IMG/VR virus record: IMGVR_UViG_3300031997_000001
Span: 171,459 to 235,458 of that record
Strand: one strand, 5' to 3'
Length of the DNA: 64,000 nucleotides
Shown: positions 27,677-38,215 of the stretch, piece by piece
How positions within the stretch are numbered: position 1 is the stretch's first letter
Layout: the number at the start of each line of letters is the position of its first letter
The notes under the pieces: model-generated
Seen by the model: only the letters and a program-made list of their open reading frames with translations
Databases searched by the model: none
Told to the model about the DNA's origin: nothing
Program-made: the position numbers and the translations under genes

Positions 27677-27982
27677 TTAGTGGACCTTGAGGAAGTCGTC
27701 GCCGAGCACGGGGGCGTCGGCCAGGAGCGCCTTCACCTCGGCCTCCACCTCGGGGATCGGCGAGGGCGCGCCCTCTCCGTAGCTGCTGTACTCCACCCAG
27801 GGCGACGAGCCCGGGTACCTTCCCCCGTTGGGCTTCAGGTTGCGGGTGGACACGGCGTAGTCGCCGTGCCCGCGCTCCCTGTAGTCGACCATGACCAGGA
27901 GCGGGCCGCCGAAGTTGGCGAGCTCCACGACTCCCATGAGGCTGATCTCGTCGAGGCAGGTGCGGGCGGACATGATCTTCAT
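27677..27982 (-). CDS. hypothetical protein
   Basis: GGAG RBS; 101 aa. Confidence 0.6.
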   Translation of the reverse strand: MKIMSARTCLDEISLMGVVELANFGGPLLVMVDYRERGHGDYAVSTRNLKPNGGRYPGSSPWVEYSSYGEGAPSPIPEVEAEVKALLADAPVLGDDFLKVH

Positions 27983-28010
27983 GTTCGGTCTCCTGTGAGG
28001 GCCAAAACCT

Positions 28011-28056
28011 GAGCGCCAGGTCCCGCGCGAGTGAACGTGCGGGTGGGCTGGCGCTC
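28011..28056. ncRNA. structured element, copy 3 of 3
   Basis: GAGCGCCAG/CTGGCGCTC outer stem, same core. Confidence 0.55.
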
Positions 28057-28079
28057 CCGTATTGGCGCTCCCGTCTGGT

Positions 28080-28301
28080 CTACTTGTACCAGACGTTGAG
28101 GCCGAAGGACGCCCGGCCGCTGAAGCCGGGGATCTTCGCGGTGCCGGTCGCCACCAGGTTGGACTTCCCGGTGCTGGACGGGCCGAGGTCCTGCGTCATG
28201 TCGACGCGCAGGACGAGCTCGGTGCCGACGACCTCGACGCGGATGTTCCGGGGGGCGCGGACGATCTTCGCGACCTTCTCCGCCTGGATGAGTGCCTGCA
28301 T
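28080..28301 (-). CDS. small basic protein (DLGPSSTGKSNLVATG family), paralogue 2
   Basis: GGAGG RBS, ATG at 28301; similar to 25621-25860. Confidence 0.75.
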   Translation of the reverse strand: MQALIQAEKVAKIVRAPRNIRVEVVGTELVLRVDMTQDLGPSSTGKSNLVATGTAKIPGFSGRASFGLNVWYK

Positions 28302-28337
28302 CGCATCACCTCCGTGAAGGGGGACGCAAATTCGCCT

Positions 28338-28444
28338 TCCCGAGCTCAGGAGACTCGGGAGCCGGCGCAAGATCCCGCTTCCTCTGGCTCGGGGAAGCGG
28401 GATCGCGTGCCGTGGGCGCCCACCCAAAGATCGGGTGGGCGCCC
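28338..28444. other. three tandem perfect hairpins
   Basis: Stems 28338-28344/28354-28360, 28371-28382/28393-28404 (12 bp) and 28414-28425/28433-28444 (12 bp). Confidence 0.7.
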
Positions 28445-28460
28445 GGTCGGGTCGCTGTGT

Positions 28461-28793
28461 CTACCGGCCGGCCTTGCAGGCGCGGCACTGGCGCACGTGC
28501 CAGAGGTCGCCGGTGTACAGCGTGCGGACCGCGCCGCACGCGCACCGGATGTCCACGGCCTGCTGCCCCCGGGCGGGGCACTTGCGCAGGGTGCCGGGGA
28601 TCATGTGCGGGTATTTGGCCAGCAGCTGCGCCTCCGTCAGCGGGGCGGCGCGGACCCAGACGGGGCGGGGGCCGACGAGCGGGGCGGCGGGGCCGGCGAC
28701 CAGCGGGGCGCGGGCGGGGGGGGGGGGGGGCCCGACGAGGGCGGAGACGCGGCGGACGGCGACGGGCGCGGCGGGGGCGAGGAAGCCGACCAC
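28461..28793 (-). CDS. KYPH-type Zn-ribbon protein (paralogue 4)
   Basis: GGAGGTGTCCC-GTG start mirrors GGAGGTGTACC-ATG of 26345; LLAKYPH...DLWHVRQCRAC. Confidence 0.7.
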   Translation of the reverse strand: MVGFLAPAAPVAVRRVSALVGPPPPPARAPLVAGPAAPLVGPRPVWVRAAPLTEAQLLAKYPHMIPGTLRKCPARGQQAVDIRCACGAVRTLYTGDLWHVRQCRACKAGR

Positions 28794-28814
28794 GGGACAC
28801 CTCCGTTGTGTGCC

Positions 28815-29095
28815 GGGCCGGCGGGCCGCGGGCGCGCCCCCGGGACAGGCGGGGGCGGGACGCGGGGCCGGACGCGGCGGACGCGGGCGCGCCCCCCGGA
28901 CGGCGGGGGGCGGGCGCGGGGCCGGGGTCGGGGTCCCCCCCCCGCCGGGGGCGGGGGGCGGGCGGCGGGCGGGCCCCCCGGCGGGGGGGCGGCGGGGCCG
29001 CCGGGGGCGGGGGGCGGCGGGGGCCGGGGGGCCGGGGGGCCGCGCCGCCCCGCCCCCCCCGGGGGCCGCGGCGGGGGGCGGGCGGGCGGTCCCGT
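28815..29095. other. almost pure G/C low-complexity tract (possible base-calling artefact)
   Basis: Very few A/T, long G and C runs; the many overlapping ORFs here are spurious. Confidence 0.7.
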
Positions 29096-29123
29096 TTCGG
29101 ATCGCTTCTCGGCGAGCGCATCG

Positions 29124-30611
29124 CGTACGCGGAGGGTTCGAACTATGCCGCTGATCGTCAGTTTTGAACCAAAGATAGGACATGAGGTTATCGCAGCTCT
29201 GCGAAGGTTGGCGCCGCATTTCATATGACAAGCTCGCCTCACGACTGGCTGAGGCCGTCATACTCGGACTCAAGCGGCACTTCATCCCAAAGAGCAAGAC
29301 GGAACTGTCGAAGAATACGACGTTCTATATAAAGGTCGCCAAATGGGACAGAGATCCATGGAATCCGCCGCCTAAAGCAGCAGCAGTAGACATCCTCCCC
29401 CCAGACACCACGAAGCTCATTCAGGACATGTTCAAGGACACCCTGACACATGTAGCTAGGGATTTTACTCTCCGCGTAGAAGTAAAGGATGTTCAGCTCT
29501 GGCACGCGGGCTTGGCGTTTTTACGCCGTTCTGACGACGAAGCGGACATATCTATCAACATTTATTGTCACCATGAGTGGGAGCTTGGATGGGGAGGAGT
29601 GCAAAAGAGTTTGAGCATGACGTATAAGAGCGTTGCACAAGTCCTGCGGCATGAACTAGAACACCTGAGGCAATATGGATCTGGTGAAAAGCGCGACGCC
29701 TATGACGCACGTAAAGACTGGTTCGCGAAATCAATGGTCAGGAACCTCGCCCCACGCGTCGTGTCTATGCCCCACTACGGCAATGCTAAGTATTATAACT
29801 GGATCACGGACGTTCACGAAATAGGTGCAATGGTTACGGACATCCATTTCAGCGCACGAAGAAGGGGAGTATCGTTCGAAAAAGAATTACAAAGACGCCT
29901 AGCGGAAGATGAGAGAAGGCTGAAGGAAGAGGGGATCCCGGACGATCTGATTGCAGACATCACCAAGAGATGCTGGGATTTCGCAGCGAAGAAGTATCCA
30001 GGACTCATTAAGAAGCAGGTACCCGAACTGAAATCCTCGGAGCCGGTTGTTCCTCCGACCGGATGAGATCTCCTATAACGAAATGCGGGACTGCGGCTCA
30101 GGCATCCAGAAGGTCCGGTTCCCTCCAGGCCGCTGACCAGCAGTTTTTCGTGATTTTCGTCGAACTATGCCGCTGACCTGCTGGCTAGCCTTTCTCGCGC
30201 GTCACATGCGTACGTGGAGGGTTCGAACTATCCGCCGGAATTGAGGCTGCCGGAGACGGGTGAACTGGGTGCCAGACCGGAAGACAAGTTCCGGGCACCC
30301 AGGTCACCACCAAGCGGAAGTCCGACGCGAGTGAGTGGTGGAGGTGAGGGTAAGAAGCTGGATGGCATCCATCCGCTGTTCACAAAACCTATCTGGATGC
30401 TTCCGCACACGAGCAGGTTGTACAATGCGTATTCAGGAGAAAGGCCCTGTAGGACCTGTCCGCACCAGGGACAGAACCGGTGTCCGGTGGCGTAGTTGAC
30501 CCCGCCGGACTGCGAATTCGAAAGCTGACATGTGCAGTAAGGCACGCCCTATTTACGCGGGAGGCAGGGATTCCGGACGCGTCGCACGCGCACGCGTTGC
30601 CTTCGAACTAT
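29124..30611 (+). repeat. four direct copies of TCGAACTAT, with longer shared flanks
   Basis: 29124-29154, 30160-30176 (17 nt identical), 30209-30236, 30602-30611. Confidence 0.7.
29182..30066 (+). CDS. HExxH metallopeptidase-like protein with MRLxxLxE N-terminus
   Basis: VLRHELEH, later HEIGA; starts MRLSQLCE. Confidence 0.65.
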   Translation: MRLSQLCEGWRRISYDKLASRLAEAVILGLKRHFIPKSKTELSKNTTFYIKVAKWDRDPWNPPPKAAAVDILPPDTTKLIQDMFKDTLTHVARDFTLRVEVKDVQLWHAGLAFLRRSDDEADISINIYCHHEWELGWGGVQKSLSMTYKSVAQVLRHELEHLRQYGSGEKRDAYDARKDWFAKSMVRNLAPRVVSMPHYGNAKYYNWITDVHEIGAMVTDIHFSARRRGVSFEKELQRRLAEDERRLKEEGIPDDLIADITKRCWDFAAKKYPGLIKKQVPELKSSEPVVPPTG

Positions 30612-34783: not shown

Positions 34784-35398
34784 CTAGTCAATCGGCTCCC
34801 ACTTCAAGATCTTGAACTTGCCGAACACACCGCGGTAGGTCCCGATCCCGATGGCGTAGCCACCCTCCTGGATCAGGTTACGGATCTGCACTTCCTGGAT
34901 TTCGGTATTCGGAAGAATTGTCAGCTGGAACTCGAGCTCCCAAGGCAGCGGGAGGACCGGCCGGACCTTCGGGTTCGGCACCCCATCCTTCAGCCGGGCA
35001 ACCCGCCGGTCGATGTAGCAGCCCGACAGGGCGTCCTTATCCCCGTCGAACTTCCCGAACTTGATCGGCTGATTGTCCTTCAGGAAGGGGATCATCATCG
35101 GCTCGATGATGGTAAAGGAAAGGCACGAATTCGCAATCGACAGCCCCTTCTTGCCCCGCAGCCGCCTGGGCGCCGACACCGTGTTCTTGGCCGACAGGAA
35201 CGAGTGGATGTTCGCCGCCGGGAGGCAGATGTTGCGCTCTTCGTCCAGGTAGAGCTTCTGCATCGGCTCCAGCTTCGTGTCGTTGTCCCCGGCGTACCGG
35301 TCGAACATGACCGCCGTGATGCCCTGAAGCCGGACCAGCCGCCTGATCATGTCCTTCGTGCCGGCTTCCGCGACGACCGCCTTCGATTTCGCAACCAT
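34784..35398 (-). CDS. stand-alone Cas7-like RAMP protein (204 aa; Vipr-like)
   Basis: First strand VRLQGITAVMF, ICLPAANIHSFL helix motif, WELEFQL strand, C-terminal G-rich loop GGYAIGIGTYRGVFGKF; GGAG RBS 8 nt before ATG 35398. Confidence 0.8.
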   Translation of the reverse strand: MVAKSKAVVAEAGTKDMIRRLVRLQGITAVMFDRYAGDNDTKLEPMQKLYLDEERNICLPAANIHSFLSAKNTVSAPRRLRGKKGLSIANSCLSFTIIEPMMIPFLKDNQPIKFGKFDGDKDALSGCYIDRRVARLKDGVPNPKVRPVLPLPWELEFQLTILPNTEIQEVQIRNLIQEGGYAIGIGTYRGVFGKFKILKWEPID

Positions 35399-35417
35399 TG
35401 ACGGATCTCCAAAAAAG

Positions 35418-36003
35418 AAACCCTGCCTTGCCGCGCCGAGCCCGGCCAGGCCCTGCCCGGCAGCGCCGCGCCAAGCCTTGCCGTGCCTCGCCGTGCCGAA
35501 GATTCCTTTGTAAAAGCTAGCCTTGCCTCGCACTGCCCTGCCTCGCCCAGCCAGGCCGGGCCGGGCCTGGCCCCGCACCGCCTGGCCCCACCGGGCACCG
35601 CCTCGGACAGAAGATCTTGTAAGAAGAGCTGGCCTTGCCGTGCACTGCCGTGCCTCGCCCCGCCGGGCGCGGCCATGCCCTGCCTCACCTTGCCTTGCCT
35701 CGCCCAGCCGTGCCAGGCCGGGCCCGGTCAAGTTGGCAGTCAATGTTTCGTGTTGTAAGAAGAGCTAGCCTTGCCTCGCTGCGCCCTGCCCCGCCCCGCC
35801 TTGCCGCGCTTTGCCTCGCCCGGCCCGGCCGCGCCCCGCCCTGCAAAGCCCAGCCACGCCGTGCCGTACCTTGCCCGGCCGCGTCTTCACGTAATGCTTC
35901 TTGTAAAAGAGCTAGCCTTGCCTTGCCTTGCCCTGCCCCACCTGGCCCAGCCTCGCCGCCGCCTTGCCTTGCCTGGCCGCGCCCGGCCCGGCCGAGCCGT
36001 GCC
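35418..36003 (-). repeat. five-block GGY-NN pentamer array (putative guide-RNA array)
   Basis: Blocks 36003-35913 (18 units, one is 6 nt), 35880-35766 (23), 35724-35630 (19), 35602-35518 (17), 35497-35418 (16); 84/93 units begin GGY; linkers 20-41 nt all contain TTACAA. Confidence 0.9.
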
Positions 36004-36015
36004 CCGACTCAGACA

Positions 36016-36504
36016 TTACTCCAGCAGCAACATCGTCGCGGGCTTCATGTCCAGCTTCTTCTGGAGCGCGATGCAGGTCTCCAGCAGCCGCTCTCCGACC
36101 TTCGGCGACTCGATCTTCTTGTGCAGGCCCATCTTCGTGACCGCCGCGTTCAGCACCGCCTTCTGCTTGGCGTCGAGCGCCGTCATGTCGATGACAGCCA
36201 GCTGCCCGATCGTCTTCCTCGCCTTCCGGCCGATCCTCTGGCCCGCCTCGTCGGCCACCCCGACCGCCTCCTCGTTCGAGACCCGCTTGATTCCCACTCC
36301 CCGGATCGGACGCCAGAAAGCACGCTCGCGCCAGAGGGTCTTCAAGGCAGAGGCGACCACGTGTGCACCATTTCCGGCCAGCCGATGTGTGACTTCCGAC
36401 AACTTCTCATGCGACACAATCTCACCGACCGGCTTGCTCCGCAGGAACCGGATGAGTTCCTCCGTGTCTGCGGAACGCCGGAAGGCCGGACTCTTCCCGT
36501 CCAT
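36016..36504 (-). CDS. putative winged-helix DNA-binding protein heading the array operon (162 aa)
   Basis: GGAGG RBS, ATG 36504; helical N-terminus then FWRPIRGVGIKRV wing-like hairpin; stop lies 12 nt before array block 1. Confidence 0.6.
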   Translation of the reverse strand: MDGKSPAFRRSADTEELIRFLRSKPVGEIVSHEKLSEVTHRLAGNGAHVVASALKTLWRERAFWRPIRGVGIKRVSNEEAVGVADEAGQRIGRKARKTIGQLAVIDMTALDAKQKAVLNAAVTKMGLHKKIESPKVGERLLETCIALQKKLDMKPATMLLLE

Positions 36505-36551
36505 TTCGTGCCTCCCGAAAGGATTGTCGAAAACCTTCACCCAACTAGATC

Positions 36552-37633: not shown

Positions 37634-38215
37634 TCATGGGCGTCCTACTTTCCTGAGTGCGGCGTGCAGGGCGGCGATATATTCCTGCTCGAGCCCCACA
37701 TCCGTGCCGCTCAGCACCTCAAACAGGAGCTTGGACTCCTCCCCATATACCTGGACGAAATCCGCCGGCGCATCGCCCATTTCCAGGAGGTTGTCCGTCC
37801 GGTCTATTAGCTTGATCAGCTTAGCCTGCACGGAGGCGGTAAGCAGGTGATCCCGGTCCATCTTCTTGCGTTCGGCCCGGGGCAGTTCTGGGTGCTGCTT
37901 GGACGGATTGGTGAGTTCCAGGACCAGGTCGGCCACCCGCTCGCCGAAATGACACTCATCGCCAGTCTTCTTCCCCAGGAAGTAGTCAGTATGGAACGAG
38001 AGCCGTATATCGCGCGGGCTGGCCTGGGGGCAGTCCTCCAGCACGTCATGAAGCCACGCCGCACAGACGCCTTCCTCGGTCCCCAAGGGATGACGAGTCA
38101 GGCGGGCAGCCACCCGGGCGGGGTGCACAATGTACGGGGCACCGGTATATTTACGGACCTGCTGCTGGTGGTAGCCAGCCGCCACGCGCGCTGCGATCAG
38201 GATGTTGTTATTCAT
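37634..38215 (-). CDS. RelA/SpoT-type HD hydrolase (small alarmone hydrolase/Mesh1-like)
   Basis: H..Q.RK..G.PYI.HP..VA, AAWLHDVLED, V.ELT, IKL.DR.DNL. Confidence 0.85.
   Translation of the reverse strand: MNNNILIAARVAAGYHQQQVRKYTGAPYIVHPARVAARLTRHPLGTEEGVCAAWLHDVLEDCPQASPRDIRLSFHTDYFLGKKTGDECHFGERVADLVLELTNPSKQHPELPRAERKKMDRDHLLTASVQAKLIKLIDRTDNLLEMGDAPADFVQVYGEESKLLFEVLSGTDVGLEQEYIAALHAALRKVGRP

What the first reader, a model, noticed from the sequence alone, without database searches (positions are those of the whole stretch)
35498..35917. Conserved block terminus GGCAAGGC(T/C)AGCT...TTACAA: probable processing or boundary signal
Seen: blocks 1-4 each end GGCAA GGC(T/C)A GCT, then a pyrimidine run and TTACAA. 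Linkers are 32, 41, 27 and 20 nt. Three linkers can fold a tiny CTT/AAG hairpin around (T)TAC. Blocks 2 and 3 are preceded by a degenerate GAC-NN unit. Block 5 ends GGCAAGGCAGGGTTTCTTTTTT directly at the RAMP RBS. Inference: the constant tail is a handle or cleavage site that separates individual guides. Filament assembly on block 5 could also occlude the RAMP RBS (autoregulation).
Basis: partly seen in the sequence, partly recalled or inferred. Interest (0 to 1): 0.7.

Follow-up and report, generated by a model that had tools for sequence, protein, structure and literature searches.

The report
3' tails of VIPR guide RNAs
The repeated GGCAAGGC(T/C)AGCT...TTACAA motif is the constant 3' tail that ends each guide RNA in a phage-encoded VIPR array, an RNA-guided DNA-silencing system first described in 2026 preprints; this is a new example of a known kind, not a new system.

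Summary
On the minus strand, 35421-36003 holds five tracts of GGYNN pentamers: 92 units, G2 100%, Y3 100%, all 16 NN used. Tracts 1-4 each end GGCAAGGC(T/C)AGCT + U-run + UUACAA. Linkers are 32, 41, 27 and 20 nt, as reported.

The downstream 204-aa gene (34784-35398) is a single-domain Cas7/Csm3-like RAMP. It is a remote homologue of the SUSP1 Vipr protein. In all 100 related loci, GG-period-5 tracts flank the gene on the same strand.

This matches the published VIPR system (bioRxiv 10.64898/2026.04.26.720920 and .720927). There, vrRNAs are YNNGG repeats capped by an invariable 3' tail, and Vipr filaments read dsDNA through the NN positions.

Three points differ or remain open:
- These tails are short and predicted to be unstructured, unlike the SUSP1 pseudoknot.
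- Cleavage in the linkers is inferred from the tight layout, because no RNA data were available.
- RBS occlusion by tract 5 is plausible but untested.

Family-wide, tracts end in A-rich units followed by a U-run. No targets were found.

The parts
34784..35398 (-). vipr gene (P0001, 204 aa): single-domain Cas7/Csm3-like RAMP with a C-terminal G-loop, GIGTYRGVFGK
   Evidence: AF2 model pLDDT 90.6. VIA-align Z 11.9 to Csm3 9g9a_D, and all top Foldseek hits are Csm3/Cmr4/type VII Cas7. Profile versus PDB sequences gives 36pp_D 'SUSP1 Vipr protein', E 1.1e-3. hhalign versus SUSP1 Vipr gives probability 89%, E 2.2e-6. More than 2100 homologues.
35399..35420 (-). U-run (35411-35420), SD GGAG (35407-35410) and an 8-nt spacer. 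This is the 3' flank of tract 5 and doubles as the vipr 5' UTR.
   Evidence: Sequence. A predicted hairpin pairs the last GG/GGC and the U-run with the SD: -11.9 kcal/mol, z -2.7. It is not conserved in relatives: 4 of 70 loci have z < -2.
35421..35497 (-). vrRNA tract 5: 15 GGYNN units plus a terminal GG. It lacks the AGCT...TTACAA tail.
35498..35517 (-). linker 4 (20 nt); tail 4 motif GGCAAGGCTAGCTTTTACAA spans 35508-35527
35518..35602 (-). vrRNA tract 4 (17 units)
35603..35629 (-). linker 3 (27 nt); tail 3 motif GGCAAGGCCAGCTCTTCTTACAA spans 35617-35639
35630..35724 (-). vrRNA tract 3 (19 units)
35725..35765 (-). linker 2 (41 nt); tail 2 motif GGCAAGGCTAGCTCTTCTTACAA spans 35753-35775
35766..35880 (-). 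vrRNA tract 2 (23 units)
35881..35912 (-). linker 1 (32 nt); tail 1 motif GGCAAGGCTAGCTCTTTTACAA spans 35901-35922
35913..36003 (-). vrRNA tract 1: 9 + 9 units with a +1-nt register slip at 35958, directly after GGCAAGGCAAGGCGG. It may be two abutting short vrRNAs.
36016..36540 (-). upstream co-oriented gene (P0002, 174 aa, no family). Its stop codon lies 12 nt before tract 1.
   Evidence: One weak homologue at the same position in L008.

Best explanation
The locus is a VIPR (Viral Interference Programmable Repeat) module on a 235-kb phage contig: an upstream array of five, possibly six, vrRNAs followed by the vipr gene. Each GGYNN tract is the guide part of one vrRNA. By homology, Vipr protomers bind one pentamer each, hold the GGY, and present the NN dinucleotides to read double-stranded DNA with a one-nucleotide skip, which silences transcription of competing mobile elements. 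The conserved terminus is this lineage's version of the invariable vrRNA 3' tail. It consists of the last complete unit CAAGG followed by C(U/C)AGCU, a U-run and UUACAA. It ends the GG register, so it ends the filament, and it marks the boundary between guides. The linkers are 20-41 nt. Tract 1 starts 12 nt after the upstream stop codon, and tract 5 ends 10 nt before the vipr Shine-Dalgarno sequence. The array and vipr are therefore most likely one transcript that is cut in the A/U-rich, unprotected linkers. Host endonucleases probably cut and trim back to the Vipr-covered tract. Shown here: the sequence anatomy, motif significance, the RAMP fold, Vipr homology, and the family-wide gene-tract association and polarity. 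Taken from the literature on homologues: RNA expression, filament formation and DNA reading. Inferred: cleavage in the linkers and the tail's role as a stop or cap.
For: 92 units with G2 100%, G1 90%, Y3 100%, and all 16 NN used. The tail core occurs 4 times against 0.17 expected, while the NN of the first four units are only 23% identical between tracts. Conservation is therefore confined to the terminus and is not left over from duplication. Linker lengths modulo 5 are 2, 1, 2 and 0, so each tract has its own register. RAMP fold. Vipr homology. All 100 loci encoding homologues carry GG-period-5 tracts on the gene's strand, immediately upstream and/or downstream, at GC 33-67%. There is no other conserved neighbouring gene. 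Across 226 unique tract ends, the last two NN are 62-83% A, and UUU occurs within 10 nt in 50% against 9% background. UUUUA is enriched 10.8-fold and UUUAC 6.6-fold. 25 of 85 linkers in relatives are 35 nt or shorter, and no sigma-70 promoter or terminator was found in the array. Published VIPR description: YNNGG repeats plus an invariable 3' tail, ~100-nt vrRNAs that co-purify with Vipr, the 1-nt skip rule, and a 3' element capping the filament.
Against: There are no RNA data for this phage or its relatives, so ends, processing and even expression are unverified. The tails here are predicted to be unstructured. The characterised SUSP1 tail is a hairpin plus pseudoknot, and 35 of 85 linkers in relatives carry strong hairpins. 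No ribozyme or known RNA family lies in the linkers. No target was found under the 1-nt skip rule. No vap-like accessory gene is conserved. Homology to SUSP1 Vipr is remote (89% probability).
Confidence: 0.78

Rival explanations
1. The conserved TTTACA/CTTACA in each tail is the -35 element of a small promoter, so each vrRNA is transcribed on its own. The motif would then be a start signal for the next guide, not a tail or cut site of the previous one.
For: TTTACA matches TTGACA at 5 of 6 positions in tails 1 and 4. Linker 2 also holds TTGACT and TTGACC. The host's promoter consensus is unknown.
Against: No sigma-70-like pair was found. The -10 would fall in GGYNN units whose NN vary. Linker 4 is 20 nt, and relatives have linkers of 14-16 nt. 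The conserved part includes the last repeat units upstream, which fits a 3' element. Published vrRNAs carry the constant part at the 3' end.
Confidence: 0.1
2. The U-run after the terminal GG is a partial transcription stop. The 3' ends would be made by termination and not by cleavage, giving a gradient of vrRNAs and attenuating vipr.
For: A U-run directly after the tract is a family-wide feature. The SUSP1 tails also end in GGG + U-run + A after their structure.
Against: There is no hairpin before the U-run in this window. Full termination would leave the downstream tracts and vipr without a promoter.
Confidence: 0.1
3. The repeated terminus has no function and is left over from tandem duplication of one ancestral block plus linker.
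For: Arrays presumably grow by duplication. The array is identical in six sister-sample contigs, so no population variation is available to test for selection.
Against: The guide NN have diverged to random (23% identity in the first four units), and the distal linker parts differ in length and sequence. Meanwhile 13 + 6 nt stay exact. Unrelated lineages share the same polarity of A-rich last units followed by a U-run.
Confidence: 0.03

Closest known systems
VIPR systems (Vipr + vrRNA). Type II examples: Escherichia phage SUSP1 and a Pseudomonas fulva prophage. bioRxiv 10.64898/2026.04.26.720920, 10.64898/2026.04.26.720927, 10.64898/2026.10.15.759431.
   Same: A small single-RRM RAMP with G-loop and thumb. 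Flanking same-strand arrays of GGY/NN pentamers with hypervariable NN. A constant element 3' of each tract. Phage location. One tract directly upstream of vipr. The G-x-G-x-aromatic-R G-loop is shared.
   Different: The protein is only remotely related (hhalign 89%, E 2.2e-6). Repeats are GGC, not GGU. Tracts have 15-23 units (up to 74 in relatives) against 9-16. The tail is about 20 nt and predicted to be unstructured, not a ~40-60-nt hairpin plus pseudoknot. All guides lie upstream of vipr. No conserved vap gene. The VIPR type could not be assigned from the text available.
Class 1 CRISPR-Cas crRNPs (Cas7/Csm3 backbone on crRNA with a repeat-derived handle)
   Same: RAMP fold (Z 11.9 to Csm3). 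A protein filament on a guide RNA. A variable guide plus constant handle arranged as an array.
   Different: 5-nt rather than 6-nt periodicity. The constant GGY is interleaved inside the guide. There is no repeat-spacer array and no Cas6, Cas5, Cas10, Cas11 or adaptation genes.
TRAP and (G/U)AGNN repeats in the Bacillus trp leader
   Same: A protein oligomer reading a trinucleotide every 5 nt in an RNA leader next to an RBS. This is the model for the autoregulation idea.
   Different: Unrelated fold. A closed 11-mer ring with a fixed repeat number. No guide function.

Membership tests
VIPR system | Vipr protein: small single-RRM RAMP with G-loop and thumb, homologous to characterised Vipr | tested here: met
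   AF2 pLDDT 90.6. Csm3/Cmr4/Cas7 are the top structural matches, Z up to 11.9. PDB sequence hit to SUSP1 Vipr, E 1.1e-3. hhalign 89%, E 2.2e-6 over 133 columns.
VIPR system | Tandem GGY/NN (YNNGG) pentamers flanking vipr on the same strand, with conserved GGY and hypervariable NN | tested here: met
   92 units, G2 100%, Y3 100%, 16 of 16 NN used. This is the only such array in the 235-kb contig. Found in 100 of 100 related loci.
VIPR system | Invariable 3' tail after each repeat tract | tested here: met
   Tails 1-4 share GGCAAGGCYAGCU(N1-4)UUACAA. Tract 5 instead runs into the vipr RBS.
VIPR system (SUSP1 clade) | Tail folds into a conserved hairpin/pseudoknot that caps the filament | tested here: not met
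   MFE z-scores of tails and linkers range from -0.5 to +1.7. This is a clade feature, not one that defines all VIPR. 35 of 85 linkers in relatives do have strong hairpins.
VIPR system | vrRNAs expressed as discrete small RNAs bound by Vipr | not testable with these tools
   No RNA run could be listed. Only DNA sediment metagenomes hold the sequence.
VIPR system | NN dinucleotides match natural dsDNA targets under the 1-nt skip rule | tested here: inconclusive
   Best matches in the phage's own contig equal those of shuffled guides. Nothing in 100 related loci. Four 9-unit seed scans of IMG/VR gave only chance hits. Exact-seed scans are insensitive.
VIPR system | Accessory vap gene next to vipr | tested here: not met
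   No gene family other than vipr recurs in more than 12 of 100 loci. Neighbours in the window have no DNA-binding family hits. The paper says loci 'typically' have a vap, so this is not strictly defining.
CRISPR-Cas (type III/IV-like) | Repeat-spacer array plus Cas6/Cas5/large subunit | tested here: not met
   No such genes or arrays in the window or in 100 loci.

The most novel reading that the evidence does not exclude
The vipr-proximal vrRNA doubles as the vipr 5' UTR. Vipr filament assembly on tract 5 ends 10 nt from the Shine-Dalgarno sequence and competes with a hairpin that sequesters it. This would set vipr translation according to the balance of free Vipr and vrRNA, giving built-in stoichiometry control. 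A short unstructured tail (CUAGCU-U-run-UUACAA) would then be enough to delimit guides in a naturally multiplexed array.
Probability: 0.25. Interest if true: 0.5.

Novelty: new member of a known kind. Interest (0 to 1): 0.35.

Why it matters
The tail fixes where each guide ends. That is needed to read the NN code correctly and to predict what this environmental jumbo-size phage silences.

This lineage shows that a ~20-nt tail without predicted structure, and linkers as short as 20 nt, can separate five guides. That is useful for compact multiplexed VIPR arrays.

It also extends the published tail concept. The family has more than 2100 members. Across the 100 related loci examined here (226 tract ends), tracts end in semi-constant A-rich units followed by a U-run. 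The conserved 22-40-nt spacing between the last unit and the vipr start codon gives a testable autoregulation hypothesis.

Tried and rejected
- Rfam: no family in the window. No ribozymes in the linkers of 29 related loci.
- Sigma-70 promoter and terminator scan of the array: nothing.
- RNA evidence: no RNA run listed.
- Laying contigs from four partial-holder metagenomes showed only identical pieces plus cross-mapping fragments of other GGYNN arrays. It gave no informative variants.
- Looking for relatives with the same tail but other guides: the full motif lies inside GGYNN arrays only in this phage's own and sister-sample contigs. The other 32 hits are chance matches.
- Target prediction by the 1-nt skip rule found nothing above shuffled controls.
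- A DNA-level iteron/centromere reading and a TRAP-like leader reading were both considered before the fold result. Both were dropped once the protein proved to be a RAMP homologous to Vipr.
- The VIPR type could not be assigned, because no supplementary tables are held.

Full report
**1. Observation**

Read on the minus strand, window 35421-36003 is five tracts of GGCNN pentamers between two co-oriented genes. In 92 units, position 2 is G in 100%, position 1 is G in 90% (mostly U otherwise) and position 3 is a pyrimidine in 100% (C 96%). The last two positions use all 16 dinucleotides.

- Tracts 1-4 each end GGCAAGGC(T/C)AGCT, then CTT / CTTC / T, then TTACAA.
- The 13-nt core occurs four times in 64 kb against 0.17 expected by chance.
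- Beyond TTACAA the linkers share neither length nor sequence.
- Linker lengths are not multiples of five, so each tract has its own register.
- Tract 5 has no such tail. It ends GGCAAGGCAGG, followed by a U-run, GGAG and 8 nt before the ATG at 35398.
- No other GG-period-5 array exists in the 235-kb contig that holds the window.

**2. What the gene is**

The 204-aa product has no Pfam, NCBIfam or PADLOC match and only a weak match to a PHROG of unknown function.

- An AlphaFold2 model (pLDDT 90.6) matches Cas7-family RAMPs throughout: Csm3 at Z 11.9, plus Cmr4, gRAMP domains, type VII Cas7 and type IV Csf2.
- A profile of 30 homologues finds one solved protein by sequence, 'SUSP1 Vipr protein' (36pp_D, E 1.1e-3). 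The match aligns the C-terminal G-loop, G-x-G-x-aromatic-R-x-x-F-G-K/R.
- hhalign against the Vipr gene of phage phiSUSP1 (KT454805, 28474-29061, minus strand) gives 89% probability and E 2.2e-6 over 133 columns.
- In SUSP1 I located GGUNN tracts flanking this gene.

**3. Family-wide association**

The protein has more than 2100 homologues of about 200 aa, nearly all unnamed. I fetched 100 loci: one GenBank phage, 80 IMG/VR contigs and 19 genomes or MAGs. They come from Planctomycetota, Burkholderiales, Methylococcaceae, Desulfovibrio, Ignavibacteria and others.

- Every locus has GG-period-5 tracts on the gene's strand, directly upstream and/or downstream, at GC contents of 33-67%. Almost none lie on the other strand.
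- No other gene family recurs in more than 12 loci.
- The unit is therefore the RAMP plus its tracts.

**4. Identification**

A literature search on 'Vipr' found three 2026 preprints. They describe Viral Interference Programmable Repeat systems.

- The system is a phage-encoded ancestral RAMP (Vipr) with vrRNAs of 9-16 YNNGG repeats, followed by an invariable 3' tail.
- The vrRNAs are ~100-nt RNAs that co-purify with Vipr.
- Vipr forms a helical filament on the vrRNA, with the 3' pseudoknot as a cap.
- The NN positions read dsDNA with a one-nucleotide skip.
- Targets are competing phages and satellites, which are silenced transcriptionally.

The window fits this description, so the finding is the vrRNA tail of a VIPR array.

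**5. What is specific here**

(a) The tails are short and not predicted to be structured. MFE z-scores are +0.5 to +1.4 for the tails with their last repeats and -0.5 to +1.7 for the linkers alone. The 3-bp CTT/AAG hairpin therefore has no support. Among relatives, 35 of 85 distinct linkers carry strong hairpins (z < -2, mononucleotide shuffles). No Rfam ribozyme is present in the relatives' loci examined.

(b) The constant part begins inside the tract.
- Over 226 unique tract ends, the NN of the last two units are 62-83% A.
- The next bases are C/U, U, A/U, followed by a U-rich run.
- UUU occurs within 10 nt in 50% of tails against 9% background. UUUUA is enriched 10.8-fold and UUUAC 6.6-fold.
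- Within loci, the NN of the first four units are 27% identical (random), while those of the last two units are 62% identical.
- The window's CAAGG-CUAGCU-CUUUUACAA is a local version of this family-wide signature.
- In YNNGG register, the last complete unit is CAAGG and the tail starts at C(U/C)AGCU.

(c) The exact motif inside GGYNN arrays is private to this phage. Scans of IMG/VR and JGI metagenomes found it in array context only in the source contig and five sister-sample contigs. Those contigs are identical over 1757 nt. The tail could therefore not be compared across close relatives with different guides.

**6. Processing**

No RNA run could be listed, so ends are not mapped. The layout argues for a single precursor.
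- Tract 1 begins 12 nt after the stop codon of the upstream gene.
- The linkers are 20-41 nt. In relatives the median is 51 nt, 25 of 85 are 35 nt or shorter, and some are 14-16 nt.
- No sigma-70-type promoter or terminator is found.
- The vipr SD lies 10 nt after the last GG.

Cleavage in the A/U-rich linkers, probably by host RNases with trimming to the Vipr-protected tract, is the most economical reading. This is inference. The preprint reports processed, ribozyme-separated and staggered arrays in other VIPR types.

**7. Autoregulation**

In 70 distinct loci with an upstream tract, the start codon lies a median of 28 nt (interquartile range 22-39.5) after the last in-phase GG. A filament ending there would meet the 30S footprint.

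In the window, a hairpin pairs the last GG/GGC and the U-run with GGAG (-11.9 kcal/mol, z -2.7). This hairpin is not conserved: 4 of 70 loci have z < -2. Downstream tracts also start within a few nucleotides of the stop codon, so tight packing is general. The idea is plausible and testable, but it is not supported beyond proximity. None of the terms I searched for it (autoregulation, ribosome binding, UTR, leader) returned a relevant passage in the third preprint, the only one searched.

**8. Targets**

[quoted passage not shown] This is consistent with no self-targeting. Nothing was found in the 100 loci. Four exact 9-unit seed scans of IMG/VR gave three chance hits and no extended match. These scans are insensitive, so the result is inconclusive.

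**9. Verdict**

It belongs to a system published in 2026, so this is a new member of a known kind. Its modest new points are an unstructured minimal tail, a family-wide tract ending of A-rich units followed by a U-run, an all-upstream five-guide array, and a last tract fused to the vipr RBS.

Noticed in passing
window 35913-36003 (-), slip at 35958: Tract 1 is 9 + 9 units separated by a single extra C. The slip comes right after GGCAAGGCAAGGCGG, the A-rich signature that ends tracts elsewhere. It could be two abutting tail-less vrRNAs, like the published 'staggered' arrays, or an indel that breaks the register. Tracts 2 and 3 also contain internal GGCGA-GGCAA(-GGCAA) runs followed by degenerate units (AGCGC, GGTGA).
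   Followed up: partly
L013, L028, L005, L077, L007 (e.g. L028 +632..+1001 relative to the match start): Some relatives have uninterrupted tracts of 35-74 pentamers, far beyond the published 9-16 units. These are either very long guides or staggered arrays without linkers.
   Followed up: no
L028 -3308..-2457 (opposite strand); L013, L027, L049, L053, L055 at +1.5 to +3.9 kb: Additional GGYNN tracts lie kilobases away from vipr. In L028 they are on the opposite strand. These may be dispersed or solo vrRNAs.
   Followed up: no
L062, L063, L070, L089 linkers: A small stem-loop, GGUGGAAACACC, recurs at the 3' end of otherwise different hairpin tails in several lineages. It may be a conserved tail element of a sub-clade.
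   Followed up: no
P0001 residues 31-41 (window about 35276-35308, -): The most conserved block of the family, MFDRY(P/A)GDN(D/N)T, lies in a loop after strand 1. Model confidence is lower there (pLDDT about 68). Its role was not examined.
   Followed up: no
window degenerate units within tracts: When the first G of a unit is lost, it is usually replaced by U: TGC 6, AGC 2, CGC 1 of 92 units. The second G is never lost. The same TGC bias is visible in L060 and L087.
   Followed up: partly
window 28461-29297 (-) and 28640-29090: A very G+C-rich, low-complexity ORF of 278 aa with many overlapping G-rich tandem repeats. It is unrelated to the VIPR array.
   Followed up: no
window 37634-38215 (-): An HD-domain phosphohydrolase (Pfam HD_4, E 1.5e-12; phrog_990) lies 1.1 kb upstream of the array on the same strand.
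   Followed up: no
L145 (phiSUSP1) 27744-29226 (-): The SUSP1 tails also end in GAGGG + U-run + A (e.g. GGGTTCTTTACAAAC) after their structured part. This resembles the GG + U-run + UAC(A) that follows tracts directly in the window's family.
   Followed up: partly
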